Shown piece after piece: positions 1 to 58,086 of a DNA stretch of 64,000 nucleotides (position 1 is the stretch's first letter; every line of letters begins with the position of its first letter). The stretch covers positions 1 to 64,000 of the forward strand of contig NIVC01002758.1 of the NCBI GenBank assembly GCA_002269645.1, in the 5' to 3' direction. The stretch is from Macrostomum lignano (taxonomy: Eukaryota). The position numbers were made by a program, and so were the translations under genes. Below the pieces are notes generated by a model. That model did not search any database. It was not told the DNA's origin and saw only the letters and a program-made list of their open reading frames with translations.

Positions 1-979
1 CGCAGTGATGTACAGGGACCCAGAAAGGGACTGGGCTGGCGACCCATCACTGAGCTCATCATTGATGGACAGGTGACCCAAGAGCCTTGGTGTCTAGTTG
101 AGAAGCCAGGCTACAAGAATCTGACAATGGAGAGCTGCCAGCGTGCCCGACTGCTGTGAGTTCCTAATGACTATTTTAAAGGGACAGCACGGTCCTCATA
201 TTCTAAAAGTACGTAGAAAAACTTACTTTTTGAAAATCCAAATTGCAGCATCTTCGCTGAAGTGCATCTCAGGCCTGCTGCACCAGAAGTACGGACCTCA
301 CGTGCTCTCCAAGCTGGTCGGTCCGAGCTTGGACGTCACCCTGCTCGACTGCAGCTTCGGTGACAAGAAGTGCACACCGGCTGACTTCACTGCGCTGCAC
401 CATCCCTACTACGGCGCCTGCTACAAGTTCAACAGCGCTCCGTTCCTTCGAGACCTGACGCCGATGCAGCACGGTTTGCGTCCGCTCAGTCTGAAGCTAT
501 TCGCCGACGATCACGACTACCTGGGGAACCGGCGTCCGGACACCTTCACGGCCGTCCGAGCAGTCATGGGCGGCCCGTACAATCTCGGAGAGCGAGTGAC
601 CCGGCTGGATTCAACTTGATCCTGATGCCGCCGGGAGCTTATCCGGGCACCTCACATGCCATTCCAATTTACACGGGGGCTCGGTCCACTGTTCGAATAA
701 GCTACTTCGAGGACACGGACAACACAACAAGAGGTTTTTGCAACCCTCTGAAGTCAAGCACCAACTACAGTATCTACAGCTGGAGCCCGACCGTGCTTCG
801 ACCAAGATACGAGCAGAGCTTTTCGATGCTGGATCCGTACTTTTTGTGAGTTTGAGCAACTTTAGCTCATGTAAATGTAAAAAGCCGTTTTACTTCTTAT
901 ATGTTGTGAGATTGTATTTCCGTTGATTTGTTTAAAAAATGAAAATGCAAATTATTTCTTTTCGCAAATGATATTGATA

Positions 980-1710
980 TCGCTTTTGACAAGCTAAATG
1001 GAAATTTGGACAATCAAAACGGGACGCAATAGACATTCAAGCCAGGCCGCAGACTCGGGCTGCTTGGGAATACACAACCATAGAGTGTGAAATGGACAAT
1101 CAAAACGGGACGCAATAGACATTCAAGCCAGGCCGCAGACTCGGGCTGCTTGGGAATACACAACCATAGAGTGTGAAATGGACAATCAAAACGGGACGCA
1201 ATAGACATTCAAGCCAGGCCGCAGACTCGGGCTGCTTGGGAATACACAACCATAGAGTGTGAAATGGACAATCAAAATGAAAAAAAGCCATTCAAAACGG
1301 GAATTTGCCCAATGTAATGTATTTTTTATATCTCGGGCCACTGGAATATTTAAAAAGTGAAGAAAGTGCCAGTTACCGGAAGATTCTTGCTCTTGTTCAA
1401 TCGCATCTATGAGCCGCTGGCGATCTGCTACAGGAATTGGTGACGCCATTGAATGGGATCGCTTTCAGGCCAAAGACGAGCAAGCAGGAGAGGGAGGGAC
1501 AGAGAGCTATAAAATCTCAGTCCGATTTCCGTTTTGAATCGCTTTTTACCATATGAAGGTCCAAAGTTATAGTCTATGGCCAAGCCTCCCTCAGTAGACT
1601 CTGAAAGAACTGTTTAAGTCCATGACTAGGGTGAGATCTGTGGCCTGGCTTGAATGTCTATGGCGTCCCGTTTTGATTGTCCAAATTCCCATTAATATCG
1701 CCAAAAGCGA
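980..1710. mobile_element. Non-autonomous TIR element (Tc1/mariner-type MITE)
   Basis: ~74-bp imperfect inverted repeats (980-1053 vs 1637-1710, core GGACAATCAAAACGGGACGC.ATAGACATTCAAGCCAGGCC), with TA at 978-979 and 1711-1712. Confidence 0.75.
1008..1277. repeat. 86-bp tandem repeat, ~3 copies, inside the MITE
   Basis: GGACAATC recurs at 1008, 1094, 1180 and 1266; the units are identical. Confidence 0.95.
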
Positions 1711-2090
1711 TAATACGAAGCTCATTGTCTAACAATTTGACGTAAACACCACACCCCAAGGGAAGGGAAGACGGACGCGAGTGTTTGCGAGTATCGAGTA
1801 CAGTGCGAGTGGATGCGACGGTCCAAAATCCGAAAAATGATGGGAAAAATAGTGAAAGAAAAACGGGGGGCACGCAGAATTCTGGTCACGCTTGCAAGCA
1901 AAATAAAATAAGCAGTCATTAAAACAGCACTTAATCGATAAAACAACAGTCATCATTGCAAAAAAGATAAAATACAAAATAAGAAAAGTGCACGAGTTGA
2001 GAAGAAAGAAACCAGAGCATTTGAGTCCAAGCCAGAGGAAAAAGAAAGCAGACAGCACACAGCTTCTACCCAGAGCAGGCAAACGAAAAA

Positions 2091-3080
2091 TTATAGGCAT
2101 TGAGACAGTTTGCGAACAGCCGCCAGCTGGAGGTCGAAGCCTTTCTCCAGCCCCAGGTACACCTCAACCGCCGAGCTCCGCCAGTCGCCCAGGGCCTTGA
2201 CGACCGGCAGCGGCACACCGGCGCGGAACGCCAGCGAGGCGCCGCCGCGTCGAAGGCTGTGAGGGGACAGAGACCGGTCTGCCAGGCCGGCACGGTGGAC
2301 GACGTGCTGAAACAGGCGACAGAACCGGGTGCCGGTCAGAGGCGTCAGGCCGCCGCTGCTTCGGTAGGCGAAGAGGTGGGCAGCAGCGGCGCGTCGGGCT
2401 GGTTGATGCGCAGGTGGTGAAGCAGCGCTGCCACCGGGCAGAGCGGGTGCTGCGCCGCGTGCCGGAGGCGCGGCAGGACAACGCGGTGCACTCGCTGGCG
2501 GAACTGGTTCGTCTTGGAGCGCCGAATGTGCAGGATGGCCAGATCCGGTGATACTTGCAGGTCGCCGCAGGTGACCGCCTCGCCGGCTGGTGGGAACGGT
2601 TTCGAGCAGCACAGATTGGCGCGGCGCAGGAGGCCCCAGAATCCGACCAGGGCCGCCGCCCAGAAGGCTGCATCTTGAGGCTGCTGCAGGCGCAGGGTTC
2701 CTCGCAGTTTGAGGAGGTCACCCAGAGTGATGGGCGCCTTGCGCACCGGCGGCTTGGCGAGTTTGCGCTGCACACCGCGGAGGAGCAGGTCGAGGCGGGG
2801 GTCGCGAGGAAGGCCGCGGCCGGTCTGGAGCTTGCAGTGCAGGTCTGCGGCGTTAATGTACGCACCGACGCTGGCATGCGAGGAGAGGCGGTCGGACAGC
2901 GCGATGATGTCGTGCGCGACCTGCTGCAGAGACGGTCTGGTGCTGTCGATGCGCATCTGCTTGCAGAACCGCTTCCAGGAGTCGATCTGGCAGCGGTAAG
3001 AGCGCGCGGTTGTCTCAGCGAAGGCCAGGTGGCAGAGCTCGCGGTAGCGCTTGCTGAAGTTCGCGCTCGGGACTTGAGGC
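2091..3080 (-). CDS. Tyrosine recombinase of the retroelement (frameshift near 2390)
   Basis: N-terminal LAFAETTARSYRCQIDSWKRFC, then the catalytic R-K-HxxR-W-Y residues, split over ORFs 2345..2956 and 2091..2612. Confidence 0.9.
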
Positions 3081-3099
3081 GGGCGATTTGTAGGGCGAG

Positions 3100-4690
3100 A
3101 AATTCGCAGGTGGCTGGCGAGAGGGTGTGCTCTCTAAGGTTGCTAAGGTCAACGTGAACAGAGCCAAAGAGCCGGAGCAGGAAGTTTGTCAGCTCGCTGA
3201 TGTCATCGGCTCGGCTGCCACTATCAGCGAAGATCTGGAATGTCCCAGGGACGTGGAAGGCCTGGACGGAGAGGTCGCGGTGCGCAGCGAGGAGCATCAG
3301 CTGTTGCAGAGCCGAGTTGACGACCCGATTTGGCGACGAGCCCTTGTTGATGGCGCCGACTGCGGCGGTGCTGTTAGAGTAGATCACAAGCTGGCTGCCC
3401 AGTTGCAGCTGCTGCTGGAAATGCAGGGCCGTAAGCACTGGCGCGAGACTTTCCTTGAAGTTGATGTGGTTGAGTCGCGGTGCCAGTCCATGATGAGCCA
3501 ACTGGTGGTGTCTGGGCCGCGGATGATGCCGCAGCCGCCCCAGTTGGACGCGTCGGACTCGATGGCCCAGCTGGGCCCGTGGGAACGCCAGATTTTGCAG
3601 CTGGGGGAGGCGGCCAGGCAGGCGTCCCACCAGCTGGATCTCGCGGAGATCATTGTGCACGCGCAGTTTGTGCCGCTGCTGCTTCAGGTCGCTGAGCTCG
3701 AGCAGGAGTGGTCTCAGGAAGCACCTCCCAATGCGGACCACCTGGCAGACCCAGTTGATGCGGCCACAAAGCGATTGGAGTTGGCGCTTGGTGATGCGCT
3801 TGCGAGAGAGCGCGGACTGCAGCTGAGACTTGGTGGCGTCGAGCTTGTCCTTCGGAAGCTCCAGCAGGCCGCTGACGGTGTCGATGAGGACGCCCAGGTA
3901 GACCAGTCTGGTGCACGGCGCCACCACCTTGCTCCAGTTGATGGAGAAGCCAAGCTTCCGCAGCAGATTGAGCAGGGTGTCGAGAGCGAGCTGGCAGTCG
4001 TCCTTGCTGGAGGCTGCTATGGCGAAGTCGTCGAGATAGCTGCCGATATCGTTGAAGCCCCGTCTCTGCATCATGCGCTTGACGGCCTGGCTCAGGCGGT
4101 GAAAAACTTCCACGGAGGCAGCAGCGCCAAAGGGGAGCCGCGTGTCGCAGATGTACGAATCGCTGCGCTGGTCGCTGAATTTCCACTTCAAGCCGGTGAG
4201 CCGAAAATCGTGCGGGCTGATGCCGACACTCCGGTAGGCATTGGCGAGGTCGACTTTGGCCATGAACCAACCGGGCTGCAGCTTGGCGGTGAAGTAACTG
4301 ACGGTCTCGAACTTGATTCGGTAGTCGGAAGAAAATCGGCTGTTTAGGGAGAGACCCGGAGGGTTGGAGCAGTCGTGGGTGAGTCGAATCTTGTTGTTGC
4401 CCTTCGGAATGGCGCCAAGGGCGCTGATGACCTCCGGTTTGTCACTGACTTGAACGTAGTGGCCATCAAGGATTTCCTCTCGCACCTGCTGCTCGACCAG
4501 CTGCCGGTAACTGTTGACTTATAGGTAGTTCTGGATTTCTGACATAGTTGAGGCTCTTTCTGACGGGTCAGGGCAGGTGAGTTGGAAGCCGTTGCGGATG
4601 CCATTCAGCAGGAATTCGCGGTCAGGATCGTCAGCCAGCTCAGCTTCCCAGGCGGCTGTGGCGAGGTCGGATGAGAAAACAACGGACTCG
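3100..4690 (-). CDS. Reverse transcriptase / RNase H of the retroelement (frameshifted)
   Basis: ORF 2164..4485 carries the RT motifs. The RNase H DAS segment is displaced into ORF 3384..3653. The upstream segment DDPDREFLLNGIRNGF lies in another frame. Confidence 0.9.
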
Positions 4691-4699
4691 AGGGGCTTG

Positions 4700-5398
4700 G
4701 GACAGGGCCAGCCGGGGGGCAGCGGGGGTTCGACTTTGGCTTCCGCCGGGGCAGCTGCGCTGCCAGTTGAGCCCCCCGGCCGGCAGAGATCGCGTTGCCG
4801 CCCTGACTTGACTTTGGTGCCAGAATGTGCTTGGATAGCAGCTGCAGCGACTCCCGCTCCCAGCTGCCGCTCGACTGATGTTGCAGGATCCTGAAGTCTT
4901 CATCGTAACAGTTGAGGGTGGCCTGACTGAAACCCTGGTGCATAAACTCGCCGAACTGCACACAGTAGCGAACGTAGGCCTTCAGCTGTTCAAGATCCAC
5001 CGCGCCATCCTTAACGGTGACCAGGGAACCTCGTCGAGGAGTTTCAGCAGGATTCGGTTGCTGCCTGCTACCCACTGACCCGCCGAGATCTGCTCAGTCC
5101 AGACTCTGGACTTCTCGCCGGAGGCAGGCTCCTCGCCATCACGGTTGATAAAGTCCTTTACCAGAAGGGGCTTTGACGGTCCCGACGGCCTGGCAGAAGT
5201 GCTGTAGAGGCCTTGAAGGCCCAGGTCTGGCAGTCCCAGCTCCGGCTCATAGGCAGCAGGGGACCGGTCAATCGGCAAGGGGCTCCGCAACTTACGGCTC
5301 TGTTGGCAAGGCTTGTTCTTCAGCTCAGCCTCGATCTCAGCGGTCTGGCGTTGGAGAGTCCGTTGGAGAGACTTGCAACTCTCGCTTGCGACCGCCAC
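4700..5398 (-). CDS. Gag-like ORF1 of the retroelement (frameshifted)
   Basis: ORFs 4982..5398 and 4605..5075. The YDEDFR...W motif and the position upstream of RT fit a DIRS-group gag. Confidence 0.65.
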
Positions 5399-6639
5399 TG
5401 GGGAGTCCCAGTTGGCGTAGACGGTCTCTAAGCTGCCTTGCAGTCATTTGGTCAATTAAAATTTCGGCCATTGCAATTGCAGCCTAGGCAGCACTCACGG
5501 CACTCCGTACGATTAAAAAAAATTTCATGCAGCGCGAGAAAGGTGAGGCAGGCTGAGTAAAAGCTAGGTGATATAAACCTCACGGCGGAGGGGTGCAGTG
5601 CAGAGGGGGTGGACTTGGGGTGGGTGTTTACAACCAATCAGCAAACGCCGATTGGACACATCATTGTTTATTTCTTACAATATCGCTTACAATAGTCGTT
5701 TTTAATCACTGCCTTCAACTTTCCACTTTAACTTTCCAGCGAATTCAACAGCAGCAGCTGGGTCTTCGAGGACAACCAGGAGTCTTGCGCCAATCTCGCC
5801 GTTGTCGAAGAGTTCGTTGGAAAGTGCGGCTGCCTGCCGTATCCGCTGCCAATTCCGACAAAGTACATCAACATTCCCGACTGCTTTACTTTGGAGAACT
5901 CCAGTTCGGCCGGCATCGACCAGCTGTTGACAACCGAGGCCTGCGCCATCAACTTGTTCAACCAGTTTGAGACGCTCACTGAAACCTTCTGGGCGAAGTG
6001 CAGGCCGAACTGCGGAAAGCCAAAATACTTGACGCAGCTGGTGAGTCAGGCTTAGTCCAGTTGCCCAAAGTGTATAGGTTTGTTTAGGTAATTATTTTTA
6101 CTATCGTGCTTTCAAAAATTTGATATGACTTGGCCTTTTCTTAGTAACCCTGTTGATATTCGTAGAGCCTTTGTTTAAAAACTCAGGGTTCTCTGTCAAT
6201 TTAAAATTCCACATGCATGTCCGGTGCCTAATAATCATAAAAATGGCATACGATCGTATATTAGCCTTTTGTTCTGAACGAAAAGCTCTACGAATATCGA
6301 TAGAGCTACAAGAAAGGCAAATCATGTCAAAAGATGAACTTCGGGTCTGCTTCCAATATAAAGCAATTACAATTTTTTGTGCTGAAAAAATTAAATCCTC
6401 CATTCTCCGTAATGTATTTTTTCGGTAAAACCTGCCTCTTGAGCATCTCCTTCTTCTCAATCTCGTCCTTCTCCTTGAGAATTTACACTTATAACTAGAT
6501 GATTGATGAATGCTTCGTGTTAAGACTGATCAAAGTAAGAAAGAAATTTTCAGTCAAGAATCGCTTGAGAAGTTTGTTTAACGTCACGAACATCATACAA
6601 TACGTGTTCGACATTCATTTCAGTGCAAAAGTGCATTCT

Positions 6640-6950
6640 TGATTTGACTTGGCACCAGGGGGTTCTGGGAATCCGAATCCGGATAGAGCGGGGAGGCGTT
6701 GTCGCCCATTCCGCTAACCTCTGGCGACCACGGGCAGCTGGTGCTGCGGTGTCGCGCAGGGAGACCGGTGGTGCCGGTGTTCGCAGCGCGGTCCCCCTCC
6801 CGGTCTCCCTCGCTCGCCCGGCTGCCCTTGGGTAGCGGATGAGCTGGCAGAGATTCTCGGGCCTGAAAACGGGTCGAGGTAGATGAGCCTGTCCTGAGTA
6901 GAGGCAGGGCATTCTCAGATGAAGTGCTCCGCATTTTCAACAACGGAAAG
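6640..6950 (-). mobile_element. Degenerate non-LTR retrotransposon 3' fragment
   Basis: Similar to 11590-12045 and 14905-15175 (GCAGAGATTCTC.GGCCTGAAAACGGG...GAGCCTGTCCTGAGTA). Confidence 0.6.
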
Positions 6951-8621
6951 GCGCTAGGAGGGCGCTAGCACACCTCTCCCTGTGCTTGGTTGTCACCCAC
7001 TGGTTAAATCCAAGTGGTGACAATTACAAAATGTCTATAAGAAGCTTGTTGCGACAACAGAACCAAAATTCGAGTATTTCCAGTTGAGAACAACTAGTGC
7101 TTTTGGTGTCAAAAAAATCCCTTTTCTATATATTTTCCTATGCTAAAATCTGGTGGGGATCCAAGCATTAATCACAAAGTTATTCACGAAACAAGTTGTA
7201 AAGTTACTTATGGGACACCCTGTATTTCCAATTGAGAACACCTAGTTATGTTTCCAACCTTCCAGACGACTCAGCCGTGGCCCGACGCGTCCCACGCCGC
7301 TTACAACGCGACGCTGCAGTCGCTCACTTCGCTGATCGGCTTCCCGAAGCAGGTGAGCCCCGACCAGGGCCTGACCATGCTCTACTACTCCTACCTGCAG
7401 GGTGAGCAGCTGATCCAGCCCAGCTCCGTGCAGCGCTTCGGCCAGTCGCTGGCCATGCGAGAGGCGGCCCGCAGCAACCTGGCCTGGATCCGGGTCGAGG
7501 CCGAGTACCCGATCGGGTCCGGCAGCGCCCAGGCCGACGGATATCCGGTGGAGAATCTGCTGGCCGAGATGGGCGGCATTCTGGGTCTGTACTGCGGCGT
7601 CTCGGTGCTGACCATCTGCGAGCTGATGGACCTGGTGGGCCGCCTGCTGCACCGTGCCGCACTGCGGTGGATGCGCCGCAGTCAGGTTGGCAGCTCCAAC
7701 GCCAAGCTGAAGGAGCCGTCAACGAATTTATAGTTATCAGATGCTATCGAAACTCGGTAACATCAGCTATGAAGACTAAAGATGCGTGTATATTTTTTCA
7801 TTGTAATCCCTATTTTATTCTCACTCCCACGTTCAGGTATAACATTTTTACCAACGTGAATCCAGCACTTTTAAGCTGACTATCTGATTTCACAAGCATA
7901 TGATCATGTATCTCGTCTATAACATCTTCACCGGTACTCGTCCCGGATCACCATCTAGAAGTCACCTTTGTATCAGGTTTTAATATTCGCATTCCACATT
8001 AAGTTATTTGAATGCTTATAATTTTGCGTAAGGCGATGTGCCTGTTTCCGAGGGGGCTTCATGAGTTTGTGGACTTCTGACTTTGCGTGGATGCGCGCTA
8101 TGCATGTTTGTGCTTTGTCACCTTTGCTGTATCCTTATAAAGAAACTTGATTTTTCTGCCTGAAGCCGCACTTGTCAGTCATTGATTGCGATAAAACTTC
8201 TTCTTTGCCTGTATGATTGCACTATTCAGCTAGGAAAAATACGTAAAATAAAGGAACAAACATGCTCTTTGAATTAAATTATCGTTTGGTGTATTAGCTA
8301 CTGAGCACCGATCTCAAGATATGCTGCAAATGCTTATCCAGCTATTCTAAAGCTACTATAGAGCTTTGCATAGATTTAGTGGGATGGAAGAAGTTCTTGG
8401 GGGGGCATTGGGAAAGCAAAGGCCAATGAAAAAGGAAACCAGCTCTTGTGTTTTCTTCCCTCAGCATCTCTGTGGGACTTATAAGCGGCTACACTATTCT
8501 GTAGTCAATAGCAACCAGCCGCCTACTCAACTTTGGCTCCTAAATAAAGGATAAATTTAATAGTTAGCCCCCGCCAACGAAAGGCCCCTCACCCAAAAAA
8601 TAAAGCAATAAAAGCATCGAA

Positions 8622-11600
8622 ATGAGAGAAGATAAAATGCTAGACACTCCTCAAGTTGAGAATAGCGGCAAACAACAAAGCGATTCCTCAGAAGCCGACA
8701 AGACAGACGAACGCGACGCGTCGGTCTCGGTGTCGCTGCTGAGCTTCGCAGACTCCACCACTGCTCACGGGTTCTCTCGGCTGGCGGGCTCCTCAGGTCG
8801 AACTGGCAGCGGCCTGTGGCTGCTGTTTCTGCTGGCGGCCTACGCCGGCCTCTGCTACCACACCGCCACGCTGGTCCTCAAGTTCCAGAGCCACCCGGTG
8901 TCCACCAGCCTGATTGCGGAGGTTCCATTCCAGTACCCGGATATCTACCTGTGCAGTGCCAATCCTGTAGGCTACAGCCGCATCACCAAGTCCATCCAGA
9001 AGACGGCCGACTACGCCTACCTGTACGAGACCAACGTGACGGCTTACAACTTGAAGCTGCAATTCGATGTGGAAAACAATTCAGCTGCTGAAGTAAGCCG
9101 GGGAATATATACTGGTTGGTTGAACTGGCAGTCAGTGATATTGTCCAGCAAGATTGACTTGGCTCGAGGTAAGGGTACAGAATTTGTGTCTTTTTATATG
9201 TAGTGCACATGACATATCATTTTGCAGTCAGTTTGAGCTTGGTTCGCCGCCAAGTGTAACCTTTTTTATACAACAATGTTCCCCGAAATACATGAAAAAC
9301 ATTATTTTTCACATTTATCGTCATTACTATATTGCAGACCTTCTGAACAGCTGTCGAATCTCTCTGCATGGCCAGGAGTTCGTAGGAAATTACACCACAG
9401 CGCTCACCTACAACCAGAGCTTGCAGCCGGTCCGAGTGCCCTGCCTCACCTGGTCAGAGGCCCGATCGCTCGTTAGCAATATCTCATCCGCCATTGGCAA
9501 TCTGATGCCCAACCTGAACCACTCTTCGTGCGTCTACAACTCCAGTCTAAACGTCTCACTAATCAAGGATGTGTTAGGTTAGTTCCGTTTCTCTGGAAAT
9601 GCTATCATGAAAGGTTTACCGAATGACTTGACGCAACTTGGGAAGATGACTTGAGTTCAAAGTAGGAAGAGAGCTTGTTTTTGTTTGAAGCCTTAATCTG
9701 GTGCAATCCAGAAACTGTTCTCCAAGAACACGGGGCGGCTTCCACAGAAGCAGTCAACATTGCTTTGTTGGTTTGCTCAAAGGCTTTAAACAACTGATTT
9801 CCTATCACTTCAACGTCCCGCTCTTCTGATGCTAATTATCGGCAGTGGCAACAGGCTAATTAATATTTGATTTTGTTTCATATACTCACCTTCTTGTCAT
9901 TTGGCAATCTCTTTTTCAACCCGTCTCGCTTCTCCACTGCATCGCTTTGTCACACAACTCAAAAACTTCTGCGCTCTCATTCACAGTAAGAAAACGTTTA
10001 CATTCTCAGATTCCAGCATCTCAGACAACAGCTACATCATTGGCAGCGTGCTGCAAGGCCCGCTCTGCTTCCACAGATCTGCCAGCAGCGGCAGCGGACT
10101 GGACATCAACTACTGCGGCGTTCCGTATTGCAGTGAGTGAAAAAGATGTCTGTTGCTGAGGTTCAGTTTGACTATTTTTAGGCGGCAGCTAGCAAAGAGA
10201 CAGCAAAAAGTATAGCATTTTGCAAGCTAGTAGAGACTACGAGCAAGCAATTTAATCCAAGATAGCAAAACACATGAATTTTGAGCCTCACTATGTGACA
10301 CTGTGTGTTAAAGTGTGTCAAATCGGCAGGCATTTTAATCCTTGGAGCACTATATTGCTCGGCCTTTTCATTAACTTCATGCATGCCTCCAACCAAACCA
10401 ACCAGGAAGCTCCATATGAAAAAGTTACGACGTAGAGCAAGGTTCAGCAAAAAAATTCACTTAACGAAACCTGCATTGGTATAGTCTCTACTAGCTTGCA
10501 AAATGCTATTGTTGGCCAAGCTTACTTTTAAGCACACTTAAGTACAGACTTGCATAAAAATGCCCTGATGCATGCACCACCCTCTGTGCTCTGTACCAAA
10601 GACAATTAAGTCAACTAGACCATACACAATCTAAAGTCAACTTGACCATAGAGAATAAAGTCAACTAGACCATAGAGAATAAAGTCAACTAGACCATAGA
10701 CAATTAAGTCAACTCGACATAGACAATATAAAGTCAACTAGACCATAGAGAATAAAGTCAACTTGACCATAGAGAATAAAGTCAACTTGACCATAGAGAA
10801 TAAAGTCAACTAGACCATAGACAATTAAGTCAACTCGACCATAGACAAGAAAATCAACTCGACATAGACAATATAAAGTCAACTAGACCATAGAGAATAA
10901 ATTCAACTAGACCATGGACAATAAAGTCAACTTGACCGTAGACAATAATCGTCGGGCACCTTCCGAGCTTCATGTATTAGAAAATGAATTTGCTTTTAAC
11001 TAAATCTAAAGGACTAATAGTGCGGTTCAGAATGAAGGTTAATAAGTAAAAATCTTTCATAAGCGAAATAAAAACAAATCGATTTAACTTTTTGTTAATC
11101 AAGCCTCGCTTATAGAAACCACAAAAAGCTTGAGGCGCATTTTTTTGCAGGCACTATTTTAATGCAGCTGGTTATAAATTATTTATGAACTGTAGGAATG
11201 CTTTAGGCTGACTAACAAAAGAAAAAGAAGACTTGTTCAAGTGTATGAGGGGCCTACTTTACCATGTGCAAGATTTCTCATGCCACTAGCATGAGTTGAG
11301 TCCTACTATGAACTTTCCACGCATATGCAGCAACTAACTAAGGAAAGAGTTCTGTGATAAAAACTAGTACTCGAACAAGTACCATGTCGTTTTTCTGCTT
11401 CTGAAGGCAAGAGATATAAAGATGGTTCAACGCAGAGAACTACTATTGTAGTTAAAATTTTTGATAGCATTGCATTATATGTATTCTATTGTTCAAGTGA
11501 ATTAAAGCAAAATGTCATCTTCTGTTTACATTTTTTTCATAATTTAAGCAAATGAGTTAGTTGCTAAAGTGGCATTGTGTCACTAAAATATGTAGGAAAT

Positions 11601-14600
11601 TAGCTTGACTTATTTGACTCAGCTGCAGGGGCTCCGGGCATCCGGCTACAGTGGGGAGACGTCGCCTGCCGACCCCTGGCAACCAACAGGCAGCTGTGGT
11701 GCTGTGGTGTCGCGCAGGGAGATCCGGTAGTGCCGGTGTCCGAAACGTGGTCCCTCTCCCGGTCCCCCTCGCTCGCCCGGTGGCTCTTAGGTAGCGGACG
11801 AGCTGGCAGAGATTCTCTGGCCTGAAAACGGGCTGAGGTAGGTGAGCCAAGGACTACTTATATGCTAGTGGTCCTTGAGGTGAGCCTGTCCTGAGTAAAG
11901 GCGGGCAAGTCACAGATGAAGCGCTCCGCATTCTCAACAAAAGAGATGCAAAATGGGCACTCATCACTACGGATTTTTCCCTGGAGGTAGCAATGCATGG
12001 CCTGAGAGAGCCATGGTCACCGCCCTGATGTCCCTGGGCGTTCCGCTATATTTAGGAGCAAGTTAAAGATTTTACAAATCAATTTAAAAATGGTCTGAAC
12101 CAACTGTACATTAATGTGAATCGGCTTTCAAAGAAGCCGTCAAGACTCAACACGCGCTAAAAACGTCCCTACGAGTAAATACCACGGTTTGCATTACCGC
12201 CAGTTAATCCTTGATTTTAAAATTTATTCGAACAATCTATGGTCTGCTGAACTACTGCTAGTAATACGAGCTGGTCTTTTTATCCTCTGTTGTTGTATAG
12301 AAAACTAAATCAGGCAAATAAATATTGAAAATGAGCATTTGATCATACATATCTGCTTCCTATTAAAACTATTGGCTACTAATGTGTTGAAAAATTAATA
12401 TGTGCTATATTTTAGTAGTTTATTTTGCAAATATATAGCCAGCCTTTTGCTAAAGAGTTTGTAGAAAACAGCGTTTAACTTAGCTTAAATCGCCCTTACA
12501 ATTCGCGCGCAGGGAAAAGCGCCAACGCCCTGTCAAACTGCTCATCACTGAGCCAGAGGGTCGCGATTAACACGGCCTACATGGGCCCAGTGCGCGAGTC
12601 GCGATCTGGAAAGCCGTGTCTGTCCTGGCAAGCCCTGGCTAATGGCAGTCTGAGCCGCCGGTTCCGCAACTTGAATCCGGCCTACGAGTTCCGAGTGTTC
12701 CTGCCCGACAGCGAATCTGTCGCTAGCGTTGGCAGCGGCTGCCGCAGCGCCGCAGTGATGTTCAAGGACAACAGCAGCAGCCTGGGCTGGCAGTCCCTTA
12801 CCAAGCTCGTCATAGACAGCGAAATCGGACTGGGTCCGTGGTGTCTGGTTGAGAAGCAGGGCTACAGAAATCTCACGATGGAGAGCTGCAGCGTGCCGGA
12901 ATGCTGTGAGTTTAGGACGGTAGTTTGTCCACAACGTGAGATCACAGGTAGTTTTTGGGACTTAATAAATTCGACGAGTTGAGAGAATAGCTGGGATGCT
13001 GATGGTTTTGGTATGATTCGTTGAAGATTTAAGTGAAGCAGGACAATTATTTCAGTAGGTTTTGTATATTTATGATGGTTCAATGTGGTTCATTGTAGTA
13101 TTTTTAGGAAAAAATTAACACACGAAGTACAAATTATCCCGGGTTATTTCTCAGAAAATAAATCATTTGTTTCTAATTGAGCATGCCCGTCTGTTGTTAC
13201 ACGTGTGATGCGTTGAAAAAGTAAAAAGTAGCTTCTAGGAAACCCCACGTGCTGCATGAATATCGATGCGACACTATTTTCTATTTTTCAGCAACCTCGC
13301 TGAAGTGCATCTCAGGCCTGCTGCACCAGAAGTACGGACCTCACGTGCTCTCCAAGCTGGTCGGCCCGAGCTTGGACGTCACCCTGCTCGACTGCAGCTT
13401 CGGTAGCATGAAGTGCACACCGGCTGACTTCACTGCGCTGCACCATCCCTACTACGGCGCCTGCTACAAGTTCAACAGCGCTCCGTTCCTTCGAGACTTG
13501 ACGCCGATGCAGCACGGCTTGCGTCCACTCAGTCTGAAGCTGTTCGCCGATGATCACGACTACCTGGGGAACCGGCGTCCGGACACCTTCACGGCCGTCC
13601 GAGCAGTCATGGGCGGCCCGTACAATCTCGGAGAGGCGAGTGACCCGGCCGGTTTCAACCTGATCCTGATGCCGCCGGGAGCTTATCCAGGCACCTCACA
13701 TGCCATTCCAATTTACACGGGGGCTCGGTCCACTGTTCGTATGCGCTACATCCTGGACATGGACAACACAACGAGGGGCCTTTGCAACAGTAACGAGTCA
13801 AGCATTGACTACAACATCTACAGCTGGAGCCCGACTGTACTTCGGCCGAAAACTGAGCAGAGCTTTAAGTCGCCTGATCCCTACTATTTGTAAGTGCTTT
13901 AGCGTGTTGAAAAAGTTTGGTTGAGTGTGCGCTTGCGTGTAGATCTTAGGTCTAAGTCGAGCAGTAACAAGTACCTTCTTCCATGGTACGTTCTCGATCA
14001 GGGGCGTCGCCACTGGGGGGGACAGGGGGGACATGTCCCCCCCCCCCAGTAAGAGCTTTGGGGGGACATTCCAATGCTTTGTCCCCCCTCCCTAATCCAC
14101 CTTGTGACCCGTTGTGGGAAGCAATGATTTTGTTTCAGGGCGCTTAAATGTAGCACATGCAGCGCTAAAGTAGTGCCTGCGGCGCTAAATGAGTGCCTGC
14201 AGCGCCAAAATGAGTGCCTGCGGCGCTAAAATAAGTGCCTGCGGCGCCAAAATAATCGCTGCCAGCACCACTCTGAAAATAATGTACACATGTGTCAAAA
14301 TTTAGTCATGTACATGTATAATTTGCAGAATTCTTTGCTTTGCCCCCGACCATAAAATCCATGGCGACATCCCTGTTCTCGATGAGTAGTCTGAATGAAT
14401 GAGTAGTCCTGATAAGTAATTCGACCTTGTTTCTCCGCGCAGCCAATTCAACAGAAGCTTTTTGGCTTTCACGAGCAACCAGGAGTCCTGCGCCAATCTA
14501 GCCGTCATTGACGAGTTTGTCCGCAAATGCAACTGCCTGCCCTACTCGCTGCCGATCCCTGTAAAGTACAAAAACGTAATCGACTGCTTTCATCTGAACA

Positions 14601-15737
14601 AATCCGAGCCCGACGCTGTTCTTCGCCTAATCGCGAGGGAGGACTGCGCCGTGAAACTGTTCTCGCAACTGGAGACACTCACCGAGACTTTCTGGGCCGG
14701 CTGCAGGGCCAACTGTAAGATGCCCAAGTACGCCACGCAGCTTGTGAGTTGGACAAGAAATCAGCCAAGCATTGCTTTTGAGTAGTTTGACAGAAACCAG
14801 TTGTACAGCGAGCTAGAAAACTCTTGTGACTTAATGATTTATGGATTGTGTCAGGTGTTAGACGTTCAGTTTAGTACAAAAGTGTCGAAAAAGAGCTTTT
14901 TGCGACAATAGCTAGTGCTGCCGGTGTCCAGCGGAGTCCAGGAGGTGGATGGTCGCTCGCCTCGGTAGCCCTTAGGGGTACAGGACGAGCTGAAAAAAAT
15001 TCTCGGGCACAAAAGCGTCGGAAAGGTCTGGGTTTGGGTCGACCGCATTTTCAACACCAGAAACACAGAATGGGCATTCCTCACTGCGGATTTCCCCTGG
15101 AGGTAGCGATACCTGGAAAATAGCCATGGACCTGAGTGGGTCATGGTTACCACTCTGATGTCCCTGCGGTTGAGTCCAAGCGGGCTCTGCTTTGAATAGC
15201 CAAACTTTGAATACTTCCAGTTGAGAACAACTAGTTATGTTTCCAACCCTTCAGACAACTCAGCCGTGGCCCGACGCGTCCCACGCCGCTTACAACGCGA
15301 CGCTACGGTCGCTCACTTCGCTGATCGGCTTCCCGAAGCAGGTGAGCCCCGACCAGGGCCTGACCATGCTCTACTACTCCTACCTGCAGGGTGAGCAGCT
15401 GATCCAGCCCAGCTCCGTGCAGCGCTTCGGCCAGTCGCTGGCCATGCGAGAGGCGGCCCGCAGCAACCTGGCCTGGATCCGGGTCGAGGCCGAGTACCCG
15501 ATCGGGTCCGGCAGCGCCCAGGCCGACGGATATCCGGTGGAGAATCTGCTGGCCGAGATGGGCGGCATTCTGGGTCTGTACTGCGGCGTCTCTGTGCTGA
15601 CCATCTGCGAGCTGATGGACCTGGTGGGCCGCCTGCTGCACCGGGCCGCACTGCGGTGGATGCGCCGCAGTCAGGTTGGCAGCTCCAACGCCAAGGACGA
15701 CAAGGTAGTGGAGGTTCAGCCAGCTAGAAAACTGTAA
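8622..15737 (+). CDS. DEG/ENaC family channel subunit, ~894 aa, with two kringle-like extracellular modules (paralog 2, intact)
   Basis: Exons 8622-9168, 9338-9577, 10010-10132, 12513-12905, 13292-13889, 14443-14743 and 15255-15737 total 2685 nt, in frame, all GT-AG. Pre-TM1 FADSTTAHG motif, TM1, FQYPDIYLCSANP, LLDCSF/YGACYKFN, Cys-rich thumb, QPWP, and TM2 with a GVS filter and Ala at the degenerin position. Confidence 0.93.
9338..10132 (+). other. Kringle-like module 1 (exons 2-3 of the channel)
   Basis: Six Cys in kringle order: NSCRISLHGQEFVG...VPCLTWS...HSSC...GPLCF...INYCGVPYC. Confidence 0.65.
10605..10945. repeat. ~24-bp minisatellite (TAAAGTCAACTAGACCATAGAGAA)
   Basis: Starts at 10632, 10656, 10680 and onward; about 14 degenerate copies. 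Confidence 0.9.
11590..12045 (-). mobile_element. Degenerate non-LTR retrotransposon 3' fragment (C-terminal CCHC-like region)
   Basis: Minus-strand translation RDIRAVTMALSGH / LQGKIRSDECPFCISFVENAERFICDLPAF resembles the C-terminal zinc knuckle of I/R1/Loa-group ORF2. Confidence 0.65.
12513..12905 (+). other. Kringle-like module 2 (exon 4 of the channel)
   Basis: SNC...TAYMGPVRESRSGKPCLSWQ...FLPD...SGCRS...GPWCLV...ESCSVPEC matches C..Y.G...T.SG..C..W...CR...PWC...C.(I/V)P.C. Confidence 0.75.
14905..15175 (-). mobile_element. Degenerate non-LTR retrotransposon 3' fragment
   Basis: RDIRVVTMTHSG / RYRYLQGKIRSEECPFCV on the minus strand; same family as 11590-12045. Confidence 0.6.
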
Positions 15738-15844
15738 CATGACTGGCATTGCAAAAAATGAAAAATCTAGTAAGAGAGCATCGGTAAGAAGAAAGTTAAT
15801 GAGGAGCTCCCTGGTCTGTTAGTGTTGTGTTTTACTTCTCCATT

Positions 15845-16045
15845 GTGTCGGCGACTCCAGCTGGCAGGCCACATCATCCGCGCCTAGTCCTACTGCCCAG
15901 AGCCGGTGCAGGAGGTGCTGCTGCTGACGCTGCAGGCACCCTACCGGCGGGGGCAGGCGCGCACTCGGCGTTTCGTCGACTGCCTGCTGGCTGACGCCGG
16001 CGCCCCGGATTCGGCCGGCGGCGTGGCGTTCATCCGTGACGCTAA
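15845..16045 (+). mobile_element. RTE-clade LINE 3' fragment
   Basis: RRLQLAGHIIRA*SYCPEPVQEVLLLTLQAPYRRGQARTRRFVDCLLADAG resembles the RTE ORF2 C-terminus; it contains an in-frame stop. Confidence 0.65.
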
Positions 16046-16674
16046 CCCTGCGTATTCTGTTGTTGTTTTCATGTTTACATATTTTGCCCAACATTTCTTA
16101 ATCAATTTAACGATCTGAAATCTTACGCAATCAATTTTTAGTTTAACTTAGATTGGAAAAAATCTATATTTTTAATTTTCCTTTTAATCTCCTACTCGTA
16201 ATTGCTTGTTGGCATCTCTAGTTAAAGACACGGATTGTTTTGTTAGGATCCTTTCTTGCTTCTGACATTAATCGCGTACGTCTACGAGTTAAGACATTTG
16301 TTTCCATGCAAAATATACCTATTTTCATGAGTTCAAGCGTATGAAATCAAATTATTGTATTTTATGGTAAAGTTACGAGTACTTTAAAGTCGCGAGCTCT
16401 ATGGAATAATTTATAGGAAACAGCAGATTAATGGCGGAAAATTACAATCTTATTAATTATTAGTCGTCTGTACACAAGAAACTAATGTACTTGTTACACT
16501 ACTCTATACTAAGCTTGTTTCTCATGTCACAAAGATGTCAGCGGTTGGCATTGCTTTGTCCTCAACCGAGCAGCACCGCCTTCTGGTAGCTCCTGAAATG
16601 AAAAAGCATTGAAATATGATTATTTAACTAGGCATGAGTTGTTATTCCGCATCAGATAGATTTCTCACTCAACT

Positions 16675-18494
16675 TGTTCTCCTAAACCTGTCCTACTCAA
16701 CCTGTCCTACTCAACCTGTCCTACTCAACCTGTCCTACTCAACCTGTCCTACTCAACCTGTCCTACTCAACCTGTCCTACTCAACCTGTCCTACTCAACC
16801 TGTCCTACTCAACCTGTCCTACTCAACCTGTCCTACTCAACCTGTCCTACTCAACCTGTCCTACTCAACCTGTCCTACTCAACCTGTCCTACTCAACCTG
16901 TCCTACTCAACCTGTCCTACTCAACCTGTCCTACTCAACCTGTCCTACTCAACCTGTCCTACTCAACCTGTCCTACTCAACCTGTCCTACTCAACCTGTC
17001 CTACTCAACCTGTCCTACTCAACCTGTCCTACTCAACCTGTCCTACTCAACCTGTCCTACTCAACCTGTCCTACTCAACCTGTTCTCCTCAACCTGTCCT
17101 ACTCAACCTGTCCTACTCAACCTGTCCTACTAGACCTGTCCTACTAGATCTGTCCTACTCAACCTGTCCTACTCAACCTGTTCTCCTCAACCTGTCCTAC
17201 TCAACCTGTCCTACTAGACCTGTCCTACTCAACCTGTCCTACTCAACCTGTCCTACTCAACCTGTCCTACTCAACCTGTCCTACTCATATGTCCTACTCA
17301 TATGTCCTACTCAACCTGTCCCACTCAACCTGTCCTCCCTGTCCTCCTAAACCTGTCCCACTCAACCTGTCCTACTCAACCTGTCCTACTCAACCTGTCC
17401 TACTCAACCTGTCCTCCTAAACCTGTCCCACTCAACCTGTCCTACTCAACCTGTCCTACTCAACCTGTCCTACTCAACCTGTTCTCCTCAACCTGTCCTA
17501 CTCAACCTGTCCTACTAGACCTGTCCTACTAGATCTGTCCTACTTAACCTGTCCTACTCAACCTGTTCTCCTCAACCTGTCCTACTCAACCTGTCCTACT
17601 AGACCTGTCCTACTCAACCTGTCCTACTCAACCTGTCCTACTCAACCTGTCCTACTCAACCTGTCCTACTCAACCTGTCCTACTCAACCTGTCCTACTCA
17701 ACCTGTCCTACTCAACCTGTCCTACTCAACCTGTCCTACTCAACCTGTCCTACTCAACCTGTTCTCCTCAACCTGTCCTACTCAACCTGTCCTACTCAAC
17801 CTGTTCTCCTCAACCTGTCCTACTCAACCTGTCCTACTAGACCTGTCCTACTAGATCTGTCCTACTTAACCTGTCCTACTCAACCTGTTCTCCTCAACCT
17901 GTCCTACTCAACCTGTCCTACTAGACCTGTCCTACTCAACCTGTCCTACTCAACCTGTCCTACTCAACCTGTCCTACTCAACCTGTCCTACTCATATGTC
18001 CTACTCATATGTCCTACTCAACCTGTCCCACTCAACCTGTCCTCCCTGTCCTCCTAAACCTGTCCCACTCAACCTGTCCTACTCAACCTGTCCTACTCAA
18101 CCTGTCCTACTCAACCTGTCCTCCTAAACCTGTCCCACTCAACCTGTCCTACTCAACCTGTCCTACTCAACCTGTTCTCCTCAACCTGTCCCACTCAACC
18201 TGTCCTACTCAACCTGTCCTACTCAACCTGTCCCACTCAACCTGTCCTCCTAAACCTGTCCCACTCAACCTGTCCTACTCAACCTGTCCTACTCAACCTG
18301 TTCTCCTCAACCTGTCCTACTCAACCTGTCCTACTAGACCTGTCCTACTAGATCTGTCCTACTTAACCTGTCCTACTCAACCTGTTCTCCTCAACCTGTC
18401 CTACTCAACCTGTCCTACTAGACCTGTCCTACTAGACCTGTCCTACTAGACCTGTCCTACTTAACCTGTCCTACTCAACCTGTTCTCCTCAACC
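16675..18494. repeat. 14-bp satellite (CTCAACCTGTCCTA)n
   Basis: ~1.8 kb array; variant blocks recur about 708 bp apart (CTCATATGTC near 17284 and 17992). Confidence 0.97.
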
Positions 18495-19136
18495 TCCCTT
18501 CTTTCCCAGGCCTCACCAGCCGCCGATAAACGAGTACAAAGGTCCTGCCAGCGTGGCTCTGTGCTGTTGCTGCTGTGTCGGATAAGCCACAGCTGCAGCG
18601 CTGCCGCCCGATCTGGCCAATCCAGAGCCTGTCGGTGCGGTGCAACGGCCGCCGCGGCTTCGTTGACCAGCGCTGCTCGGATGCCGCCTCATGGCTGACA
18701 GGGAGGCTGGAAACAAGGGAGTGGAGTTTTTCGCATTTAAAGTGAGACAGATCGTGCTTGATTAAATTGTTATTTGTTTTCACTTAAAATATTAAAATTA
18801 ATTTTAGTGATTTTAGCTCACTTTCCTGCTTACAGTAGGACAAAAGGCGCGTATTAGTCTTAAGTATTTTGTTAGGGACCAAAAAACAAAGGCAAAACTA
18901 TTAACAAAAAATGGTTTCAGTTAAACATTAGCTTAAGGGTGTAGCACCGTTCTTTAGTTAAATATGTCATTAGCTATGTATTAGCCACAGTTTTTGATTG
19001 CTAAGTTATTAATAAAACGTTATAGCAGAAGATGTACCACCGTTAGCTTGAAATGTTCATTACAATACCTGGTCCACTGAAATGATTTAAAAGTGGTACT
19101 TGGTGTACTTTCTGTAAAAACTAAAAGATACATGTA

Positions 19137-50582: not shown

Positions 50583-58086
<7,504 letters not shown>

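What the first reader, a model, noticed from the sequence alone, without database searches (positions are those of the whole stretch)
9338..12905. DEG/ENaC channel with two kringle-like domains inserted in the finger region
Seen in sequence: the spliced protein has a normal channel frame (HG motif, TM1, palm, thumb, TM2). Between the FQYPDIYLC motif and LLDCSF it carries two six-Cys modules (approx. aa 188-303 and 313-434) with kringle hallmarks: Y/F-x-G, SG-x-x-C-x-x-W, P-W/L-C and terminal C-x-V-P-x-C. The C3-C4 loops are unusually long (~35 aa), and there is no NYCRNPD or DxD lysine-binding centre. Established knowledge: the finger domain is the variable ligand- and protease-sensing part of DEG/ENaCs (the ENaC GRIP domain sits there), and kringles are protein-interaction modules of proteases and receptors. 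I know of no characterised DEG/ENaC with this architecture, but cannot rule one out without a search. Inference: a ligand-, protease- or matrix-gated channel subfamily built by domain shuffling.
Basis: partly seen in the sequence, partly recalled or inferred. Interest (0 to 1): 0.9.

Follow-up and report, generated by a model that had tools for sequence, protein, structure and literature searches.

The report
Flatworm sodium channel carrying a kringle insert
A DEG/ENaC-type ion-channel gene of the flatworm Macrostomum lignano has, spliced into the outer "finger" of the channel, one real but highly modified kringle domain and one degenerate cysteine module next to it. I found no paper describing this architecture, although UniProt's automatic naming has already flagged its paralogues.

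Summary
It is a complete DEG/ENaC channel: Pfam ASC at 151.6 bits, HG motif, two TM segments and a G-V-S filter. About 250 residues are inserted where FaNaC has its finger and ENaC-alpha its finger/GRIP domain.

- **Module 2 (exon 4, aa 313-434)** is a genuine but divergent kringle. hhalign gives 97% probability (P 1e-10, controls about 11), and the 60 best PDB hits listed are all kringles. It misses the Pfam cut-off and the PROSITE pattern because two conserved insertions (14 and 21 aa) destroy the lysine-binding loop.
- **Module 1 (exons 2-3)** is not demonstrably a kringle. It only weakly resembles module 2.
- **Exon structure:** exons 2, 3 and 4 all have phase-1 boundaries, the classic exon-shuffling signature.
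- **Relatives:** all belong to three Macrostomum lignano clusters, which identifies the organism. UniProt already auto-names some of them "Kringle domain-containing protein".
- **Not established:** fold and disulfide pattern (AF2 pLDDT about 53), distribution in other animals, and function. The proposed role, a partner-binding or tethering crown on the finger, is inference.

Verdict: a new variant of a known kind, of moderate interest.

The parts
8622..9168 (+). Exon 1 (aa 1-182): cytoplasmic N-terminus with HG motif (H49-G50), TM1 (about aa 63-86), post-TM1 FQYPDIYLC, and the first about 70 residues of the finger. Followed by a phase-1 intron.
   Evidence: Aligns to FaNaC 64-159 and ENaC-alpha 58-149.
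9338..9577 (+). Exon 2 (aa 183-262): N-terminal part of module 1 (C188, C218, C247), with six N-glycosylation sequons. Length is a multiple of 3 and both flanking introns are phase 1.
   Evidence: The same exon order is seen in paralogue P0002.
10010..10132 (+). Exon 3 (aa 263-303): C-terminal part of module 1 (GPLC282, NYC298, GVPYC303). Both flanking introns are phase 1.
   Evidence: Weak colinear similarity to the C-terminal part of module 2.
10133..12512 (+). Intron 3 (2380 nt, phase 1). Holds a 24-nt tandem array (10595-10948) and one copy of an interspersed repeat of about 400 bp (about 11640-12040).
12513..12905 (+). Exon 4 (aa 304-434): module 2, a divergent kringle on a single symmetric phase 1-1 exon. 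Six Cys (313, 339, 380, 414, 429, 434). Two insertions relative to canonical kringles: 14 aa in the C2-C3 loop and 21 aa between CRS and ID..GPWC.
   Evidence: Pfam Kringle E 5.6e-5, 23.8 bits, below the 34.3 cut-off. PDB profile search: the 60 best hits listed are all kringles. hhalign 97%, P 1.1e-10, score 59 against shuffled controls of 11.5 +/- 2.8.
13292..13889 (+). Exon 5 (aa 435-633): end of the finger, the LLDCSF motif, and the beta-ball/palm core.
   Evidence: Pfam ASC best stretch 457-856. Aligns to ENaC-alpha 264-369 and FaNaC 199-323.
14443..14743 (+). Exon 6 (aa 634-734): Cys-rich thumb region (C650, 663, 665, 682, 702, 721, 725).
15255..15737 (+). Exon 7 (aa 735-894): palm/wrist, TM2 with G845-V846-S847, cytoplasmic tail and stop codon.
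   Evidence: Aligns to FaNaC 526-584.
1..7733 (+). Upstream tandem paralogue, cut off by the window start. It contains the end of its own kringle exon (1-155), exon 5' (249-845), exon 6' (about 5741-6049) and exon 7' (7266-7733). It shows that the kringle-channel architecture is duplicated locally.
   Evidence: tblastn: 97-99% identical to UniProt A0A1I8GPM0 (P0001) over most of the match and 92% over the last stretch, but with three 1-bp frame changes.

Best explanation
This is an apparently intact DEG/ENaC channel gene of Macrostomum lignano (or a very close relative). Its extracellular finger has been enlarged by about 250 residues carried on three symmetric phase-1 exons.

Exon 4 encodes a true kringle homologue. 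It has kept the six cysteines and the N- and C-terminal kringle motifs. It has lost the NYCRNPD/DxD lysine-binding loop to a conserved 21-aa insertion, and it gained a second 14-aa insertion. Both insertions are predicted, at low confidence, to form beta-strands.

Exons 2-3 encode a second six-Cys module. It is most likely a degenerate duplicate of the same module.

Inferred origin: a class 1-1 kringle exon was inserted into a phase-1 intron of the finger and then duplicated or diverged. A kringle's N- and C-termini are held together by the C1-C6 disulfide, so it can sit in a loop without breaking the host fold.

Inferred function: the heavily N-glycosylated modules form a protein-binding crown on each subunit's finger. 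The finger is where FaNaC binds its peptide and where ENaC carries its protease-sensitive GRIP domain. Binding of, or tethering to, an extracellular partner would bias gating through the finger-thumb interface. This would not work through classical lysine binding. The architecture is shown. The origin is strongly suggested. The function is inference only.
For: - Gene model and intact frame.
- ASC domain at 151.6 bits.
- TM, HG and GVS features.
- Insert position against FaNaC and ENaC-alpha.
- Kringle homology of module 2: Pfam E 5.6e-5. Profile against PDB: the 60 best hits listed are all kringles, the best single-kringle chain being ROR2 at 4.9e-4. hhalign is 97%, P 1.1e-10, colinear over kringle positions 5-78. 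Reversed and column-shuffled controls score 11.7 and 11.5 +/- 2.8 against 59.
- UniProt names paralogues "Kringle domain-containing protein".
- Paralogues from independent gene models join the modules to the channel on both sides. P0002 has TM1 + module 1 + module 2. P0001 has module 2 + core. P0003 has module 2 + core + TM2.
- Module 2 is 45% identical in the distant paralogue P0003, against 35-41% for the channel exons. C2 and C3 are invariant in all four sequences, and C4-C6 are present in the three that reach them.
- Introns 1-4 are all phase 1, and exons 2, 3 and 4 are each a multiple of 3.
- Module 1 resembles module 2: hhalign P 0.019 with C2-C6 colinear; shuffle z scores 2.2-5.9.
- Ten of the 17 N-glycosylation sequons lie in the two modules.
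Against: - Pfam Kringle is below its gathering score (23.8 against 34.3), and the PROSITE pattern is absent.
- Both AF2 models are poor (pLDDT 52.6 and 54.2) and Foldseek gives no significant hit (best E 0.07 and 0.28). The fold and the disulfide pattern are therefore untested.
- Module 1 has no Pfam or PDB kringle match. Its hhalign matches to kringles are short or out of register.
- No transcript evidence for this particular copy could be obtained.
- All relatives found are from one species.
- There are no functional data. Three other M. lignano DEG/ENaCs tested in oocytes gave no peptide response, and it is unknown whether they are related to this gene (PMC9234716).
Confidence: 0.72

Rival explanations
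1. The modules are not kringles. They would be a lineage-specific cysteine-rich elaboration of the finger that matches kringle motifs by convergence or composition.
For: Module 2 scores below the Pfam cut-off and lacks PS00021. The structure models and Foldseek are not significant. Module 1 has no kringle hit at all.
Against: For module 2, hhalign is colinear over the whole kringle with P 1e-10 and clean shuffled and reversed controls. Only kringles, and no other Cys-rich family, appear among the 60 best PDB hits listed. UniProt's independent rule-based naming agrees.
Confidence: 0.08
2. Only module 2 derives from a kringle. Module 1 would be an unrelated or native finger elaboration that happens to have six cysteines.
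For: Module 1 gives no Pfam or PDB hit. Its best hhalign match to kringles covers 19 columns and pairs its C5 region with the kringle C3 motif. The global alignment shifts register and scores 8.5 against a null maximum of 7.3. In P0003 the C-terminal half of module 1 is missing.
Against: Alignment to module 2 is colinear for C2-C6. Shuffle tests reach z 5.9 and 4.1 against the module 2 of P0003. The two modules share GP(W/L)C...YC/SC-x-VP-x-C endings, phase 1-1 exon symmetry, and C3-C4 loops of equal unusual length.
Confidence: 0.3
3. Annotation artefact or non-functional copy. Exons 2-4 would be skipped in the real mRNA, or this gene would be a decaying member of a duplicated family.
For: Skipping exons 2-3, exon 4, or exons 2-4 keeps the reading frame. 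The adjacent tandem copy carries three frame-breaking 1-bp indels. No transcript data are available for this copy.
Against: All seven exons of this copy are open with canonical splice sites. UniProt models of paralogues contain the modules contiguous with channel sequence. The module is conserved at 45% identity, cysteines included, in a distant paralogue.
Confidence: 0.1
4. The insert works like the ENaC GRIP domain. It would be an auto-inhibitory finger insert removed or loosened by extracellular proteases.
For: It occupies the same position as the ENaC-alpha finger/GRIP segment. One R-R-F-R motif lies at aa 351-354, read directly from the sequence.
Against: The RRFR motif is not conserved in any paralogue (TQFR, AEFQ, AHYR). 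There is no similarity to GRIP. A disulfide-locked module would not be released by a single cut.
Confidence: 0.07

Closest known systems
FMRFamide-gated sodium channel FaNaC (Aplysia, PDB 7yvb/7yvc; Malacoceros 8on7)
   Same: Best solved-structure match to the channel frame, E 2.7e-15. Same two-TM trimeric-channel family. From my own knowledge, the finger is the peptide-binding site in FaNaC, and that is where the insert sits here.
   Different: FaNaC has about 40 residues where this protein has about 330, and it has no kringle. No peptide sensitivity is known for this protein.
ENaC alpha/gamma finger with GRIP domain (PDB 6wth, 6bqn)
   Same: Both carry a large insertion at the same topological position in the finger. 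The query gap 128-450 corresponds to ENaC-alpha 150-263. Both are extracellular regulatory add-ons.
   Different: From my own knowledge, GRIP is a beta-strand domain specific to ENaC and is released by proteolysis at furin sites. The insert here is a mobile, disulfide-locked module with no conserved furin site.
Non-lysine-binding kringles of receptors (ROR1/ROR2) and of HGF and prothrombin
   Same: These are the best single-kringle sequence matches: ROR2 E 4.9e-4, plus HGF, tPA K2 and prothrombin. The N-terminal Y-x-G...SG-x-x-C-x-x-W and C-terminal PWC...C-x-VP-x-C motifs are shared.
   Different: Module 2 spans 122 residues between its first and last Cys instead of 80. It carries insertions of 14 and 21 aa and has CRS instead of NYCRNPD. 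It is embedded inside a channel loop rather than arranged in a linear ectodomain.
Tmed-krg1 of the flatworm Theama mediterranea and its reported M. lignano homologue RNA815_8153 (PMC9229212)
   Same: A flatworm membrane protein with extracellular kringles. [quoted passage not shown]
   Different: It has six canonical, reportedly lysine-binding kringles, is 1357-1367 aa long, and the paper mentions no channel domain. Its extracellular region starts at aa 29, so there is hardly any N-terminal cytoplasmic part.

Membership tests
DEG/ENaC (Pfam ASC, PF00858) | Profile match above the curated cut-off | tested here: met
   151.6 bits against a cut-off of 23.6, E 4.6e-44, in two stretches split by the insert.
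DEG/ENaC (Pfam ASC, PF00858) | Two TM segments flanking a large Cys-rich ectodomain; HG motif before TM1 | tested here: met
   Hydropathy maxima at about 63-86 and 833-860. H49-G50 present. 25 ectodomain Cys.
DEG/ENaC (Pfam ASC, PF00858) | G/S-x-S selectivity-filter motif in TM2 and a small residue at the 'Deg' position | tested here: met
   LLAEMGGILGLYCGVSVLTICE contains G845-V846-S847, with Ala in LLA. It aligns to FaNaC TM2. Identification of the motifs rests on knowledge of the family.
DEG/ENaC (Pfam ASC, PF00858) | Forms an amiloride-sensitive cation channel | not testable with these tools
   Needs heterologous expression.
Kringle (PF00051 / PROSITE PS00021, PS50070), module 2 | Pfam profile at or above the gathering score | tested here: not met
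   23.8 bits (E 5.6e-5) against 34.3. Paralogues score 17-24 bits.
Kringle (PF00051 / PROSITE PS00021, PS50070), module 2 | Significant, full-length, colinear homology to bona fide kringles | tested here: met
   hhalign 97%, P 1.1e-10, kringle positions 5-78; controls score 11.5 +/- 2.8. The 60 best PDB hits listed are all kringles. The kringle alignment A4 was typed partly from memory.
Kringle (PF00051 / PROSITE PS00021, PS50070), module 2 | Signature [FY]-C-[RH]-[NS]-x(7,8)-[WY]-C | tested here: not met
   The sequence is G-C-R-S-x(30)-W-C.
Kringle (PF00051 / PROSITE PS00021, PS50070), module 2 | Six Cys in kringle order | tested here: met
   C313, 339, 380, 414, 429, 434. C2-C6 align to the kringle cysteines. 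C2 and C3 are invariant in all four sequences, and C4-C6 are present in the three that reach them.
Kringle (PF00051 / PROSITE PS00021, PS50070), module 2 | Triple-loop fold with 1-6, 2-4, 3-5 disulfides | tested here: inconclusive
   AF2 pLDDT 52.6 and 54.2. The best Foldseek hits are kringle-containing chains (tPA kringle 2, factor XII heavy chain) but only at E 0.07 and 0.28.
Kringle, module 1 (aa 188-303) | Any significant profile match to kringles | tested here: not met
   No Pfam hit at E<=10. No kringle in the PDB profile search. hhalign 13% over 19 columns and out of register. Global score 8.5 against a null maximum of 7.3.
Kringle, module 1 (aa 188-303) | Homology to module 2 (indirect membership) | tested here: inconclusive
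   hhalign P 0.019 with colinear Cys. Shuffle tests give z 2.2, 2.8, 4.1 and 5.9.
Class 1-1 mobile module (exon shuffling) | Module bounded by phase-1 introns on both sides | tested here: met
   Introns 1, 2, 3 and 4 are all phase 1. Exons 2, 3 and 4 are 240, 123 and 393 nt.

The most novel reading that the evidence does not exclude
The kringle-bearing DEG/ENaCs of Macrostomum would be tethered sensors. The finger-mounted kringle modules would bind a secreted matrix or adhesive protein, in the way kringle-bearing Tmed-krg1 is proposed to hold the flatworm glue. Attachment or pull on that partner would then gate the channel directly. That would be a DEG/ENaC whose extracellular tether domain is built into the pore-forming subunit.
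Probability: 0.12. Interest if true: 0.8.

Novelty: new variant of a known kind. Interest (0 to 1): 0.55.

Why it matters
The DEG/ENaC finger is the part of the channel that has been repeatedly re-tooled for new stimuli: protons and toxins in ASICs, peptides in FaNaC, proteases in ENaC. In this gene the re-tooling used a recognisable mobile module taken from the extracellular protein-interaction toolkit, and the exon-phase signature of shuffling is still visible.

If the modules bind a partner, these channels would give a simple system for asking how an appended binding domain couples to DEG/ENaC gating. Deleting exons 2-4 stays in frame, which makes that test easy. They would also offer a candidate built-in extracellular tether, a component long sought for mechanosensitive members of the family.

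The case is also a caution for annotation. The kringle falls below the Pfam gathering score because of two conserved insertions, so architecture searches that rely on Pfam alone will miss it.

Tried and rejected
1. Word-indexed protein searches gave nothing useful. I tried the whole protein, exon 4, and a TM2 alignment. The results were no hits, no hits, and only about 100-aa ASC fragments from metagenomes. The spread of the architecture across animals therefore could not be surveyed.

Only single-exon translations could be submitted, so no whole-protein or trimer model was possible.

The Foldseek searches were not significant.

4. The exhaustive HMMER search also returned bacterial repeat proteins: P0004, P0005, P0009 and P0010 through Asp-box/PKD-like or similar repeats, and P0007 and P0008, which were not inspected in detail (E down to 5e-16). 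BLASTP against P0004 shows about 30-bit matches of aa 20-63 to a Cys-free repeat, added up over at least 13 near-identical copies. I rejected these as a repeat-summation artefact.

5. Two metagenome scans, one with the module 2 profile and one with the exon 5 profile, found no relatives.

6. An exact look-up of the exon-4 read-through ORF found nothing.

7. I tried to tie the gene to Tmed-krg1 / RNA815_8153. The sequence is not in the paper or its supplement, and Lengerer et al. 2018 is not held.

8. The furin-like RRFR at aa 351-354 is not conserved in the paralogues, so I dropped it as a feature.

9. The Rfam scan of the window found nothing.

Full report
**Observation**

Reading 6800-17400 and assembling candidate exons gives seven + strand exons: 8622-9168, 9338-9577, 10010-10132, 12513-12905, 13292-13889, 14443-14743 and 15255-15737. 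Every intron is GT-AG. The finding's coordinates are exactly exon 2 start to exon 4 end.

Pfam finds the amiloride-sensitive sodium channel domain at 151.6 bits (cut-off 23.6), split into two stretches. The sequence shows H49-G50, two hydropathy maxima (about 63-86 and 833-860), LLAEMGG...G845-V846-S847 in TM2, and 17 N-glycosylation sequons, all between the TM segments. The channel frame is therefore complete.

**Where the insert sits**

A search of the whole protein against PDB sequences gives FaNaC as best hit (E 2.7e-15), then ENaC and ASIC subunits.

| Query residues | FaNaC | ENaC-alpha |
|---|---|---|
| 36-128 / 38-127 | 64-159 | 58-149 |
| 458-591 / 451-558 | 199-323 | 264-369 |

About 330 residues here occupy the place of about 40 in FaNaC and about 114 in ENaC-alpha (its finger plus GRIP domain). 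About 250 of them are the two six-Cys modules on exons 2-4. The remaining 75 or so (aa 129-182 and 435-457) are presumably the native finger.

**Is module 2 a kringle?**

Evidence for:
- Exon 4 alone gives Pfam Kringle at E 5.6e-5, but only 23.8 bits against a cut-off of 34.3.
- An exhaustive HMMER scan of 1.84 billion representative proteins found three real relatives (P0001-P0003) and a 19-kringle sea-urchin apolipoprotein(a)-like protein at E 2e-5.
- A profile of module 2 from the four flatworm sequences (A1) was searched against all PDB sequences. The 60 best hits listed were all kringle-containing proteins: HGF, ROR2, ROR1, tPA K2, angiostatin, prothrombin, apo(a) and uPA. The best single-kringle chain scored E 4.9e-4. 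The N-terminal Y-x-G..S-G-x-x-C-x-x-W and the C-terminal PWC...C-x-VP-x-C both matched in the right order.
Reversed and 40 column-shuffled versions of A4 score 11.7 and 11.5 +/- 2.8, with a maximum of 18.6.

The alignment explains the failed thresholds. There is a 14-aa insertion in the C2-C3 loop. A 21-aa insertion lies between C-R-S (canonical C-R-N) and I-D..G-P-W-C (canonical P-D..G-P-W-C). The PROSITE pattern therefore cannot match, since the sequence has x(30) instead of x(7,8), and the lysine-binding DxD centre is gone.

Both insertions are conserved among the paralogues (E-F/Y-R/K-V-F-L-P and C-R-S-A-x-V). The low-confidence models predict them as strands.

Fold-level confirmation failed. 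The two AF2 models have pLDDT 52.6 and 54.2. Foldseek puts kringle-containing chains (tPA kringle 2, factor XII heavy chain) on top, but only at E 0.07 and 0.28. Homology is well supported. The fold and the 1-6/2-4/3-5 disulfide pattern remain untested.

**Is module 1 a kringle?**

No direct evidence supports this:
- It has no Pfam hit at E<=10.
- No kringle appears in a PDB profile search.
- A forced global alignment shifts the cysteine register and barely exceeds the shuffled controls (8.5 against a maximum of 7.3).

What links it to kringles is similarity to module 2. hhalign gives P 0.019 with C2-C6 aligned. Smith-Waterman shuffle tests give z 2.8 and 2.2 against this gene's module 2, and 5.9 and 4.1 against the module 2 of P0003. 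The two modules also share the GP(W/L)C and (Y/S)C-x-VP-x-C endings, the same unusually long C3-C4 loop, and the same exon phase.

I read module 1 as a probable degenerate duplicate, about 60-70% likely. It is not an established kringle. In P0003 the C-terminal half of module 1 is absent or mis-modelled.

**Origin**

Introns 1, 2, 3 and 4 are all phase 1. Exons 2, 3 and 4 are 240, 123 and 393 nt. Symmetric 1-1 modules are the textbook signature of exon shuffling of extracellular domains, kringles included (established knowledge, Patthy).

Skipping exons 2-3, exon 4, or exons 2-4 stays in frame. This fits insertion into a pre-existing phase-1 intron. It also means that kringle-less isoforms are possible.

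**Organism, relatives and prior knowledge**

The three relatives are UniProt entries of Macrostomum lignano: A0A1I8GPM0, A0A1I8G9S9 and A0A1I8FXR6 (taxonomy). P0001 is 97-99% identical to most of the tandem copy at the start of the window (92% over the last stretch), so the window is M. lignano or a very close relative.

UniProt already auto-names P0001 and P0003 "Kringle domain-containing protein" and P0002 "Acid-sensing ion channel 1-like". The architecture is therefore visible in databases, and an independent rule-based system agrees on module 2 but not on module 1.

The paralogue models join the modules to channel sequence on both sides. The distant paralogue keeps module 2 at 45% identity, against 35-41% for the channel exons. 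This argues for constraint on the module.

Full-text searches combining kringle with ENaC, degenerin, acid-sensing ion channel or amiloride-sensitive found only papers on kringle-bearing proteases that act on ENaC. None describes a kringle inside a DEG/ENaC.

Dandamudi et al. expressed three other M. lignano DEG/ENaCs and saw no peptide responses (PMC9234716). Whether those are related to this gene is unknown.

**Mechanism (inference)**

A kringle's two ends are tied together by its C1-C6 disulfide (established knowledge). It can therefore be grafted into a surface loop. The finger is the family's stimulus-sensing and most variable region.

The most economical reading is that two glycosylated, non-lysine-binding modules form a partner-binding or tethering crown on each subunit's finger, and that this crown modulates gating through the finger-thumb interface. 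A GRIP-like proteolytic role is less likely, because the only furin-like motif (RRFR 351-354) is not conserved.

One lead could not be tested. In the polyclad Theama, a membrane protein with six kringles (Tmed-krg1) is specific to anchor cells and is required for adhesion. Its authors report a homologue in M. lignano (PMC9229212). That paper mentions no channel domain, and the protein's extracellular region starts at aa 29, which does not look like a DEG/ENaC. I give a direct relationship low odds.

**Verdict**

The gating mode is unproven.

This is a new variant of a known kind. It is undescribed in the literature I could search but already flagged by automatic annotation, and so far it is seen in one species only. 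Interest is moderate, at 0.55.

Noticed in passing
window 1-7733 (+): A tandem upstream paralogue of the channel gene. It is 97-99% identical to UniProt A0A1I8GPM0 over most of the match. It has three 1-bp homopolymer length differences that break the frame, near positions 20-25, 139-141 and 590. UniProt A0A1I8GAG6 (P0012) ends exactly at the third site. These could be long-read consensus errors or a decaying copy.
   Followed up: partly
window 2164-4482 (-): A 772-aa ORF with reverse-transcriptase domains (RVT_1 E 6e-15) lies inside the 4.9-kb intron between exons 5' and 6' of the upstream paralogue. It is a retroelement insertion.
   Followed up: partly
window 22954-24537 (-): A single 527-aa ORF with a PR/SET domain (PRDM2_PR E 1e-34) followed by a C2H2 zinc-finger array. 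The fingers are encoded by near-identical 84-bp tandem repeats (23013-23394, 95% matches). The layout resembles PRDM9.
   Followed up: partly
window 6677-6943, 11640-12040, 15043-15166: An interspersed repeat of about 400 bp occurs in introns and flanks of both channel paralogues (72-87% identity). It has no Rfam match.
   Followed up: partly
window 16667-18495; 54998-57668; 37499-38657; 27346-28216: Large minisatellite arrays: a 14-nt unit x131, a 24-nt unit x110, a CT-rich 22-nt unit x51 and a 21-nt unit x43. They account for the strong GC-skew swings and for several long spurious ORFs in the window.
   Followed up: no
window 12572-12703 (aa 20-63 of exon 4): The kringle N-terminal hairpin plus the first insertion (YMGPVRESRSGKPCLSW...FRNLNPAYEFRVFL) resembles a Cys-free Asp-box-like repeat (TGYTGxIVRWESSTDNGNTW...YxNLNxTTQFRAFV) of giant Bacteroidota-type surface proteins. 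The repeat copies add up to E 5e-16. I judged this a repeat-summation artefact and did not explore it further.
   Followed up: partly
window exons 4-7 versus the upstream copy: Between the two tandem copies the channel exons are 88-97% identical in protein, but the kringle exon is only about 59-68% identical. The sequence just upstream of exon 7 is also conserved. This suggests gene conversion of the 3' half, or faster divergence of the kringle.
   Followed up: no
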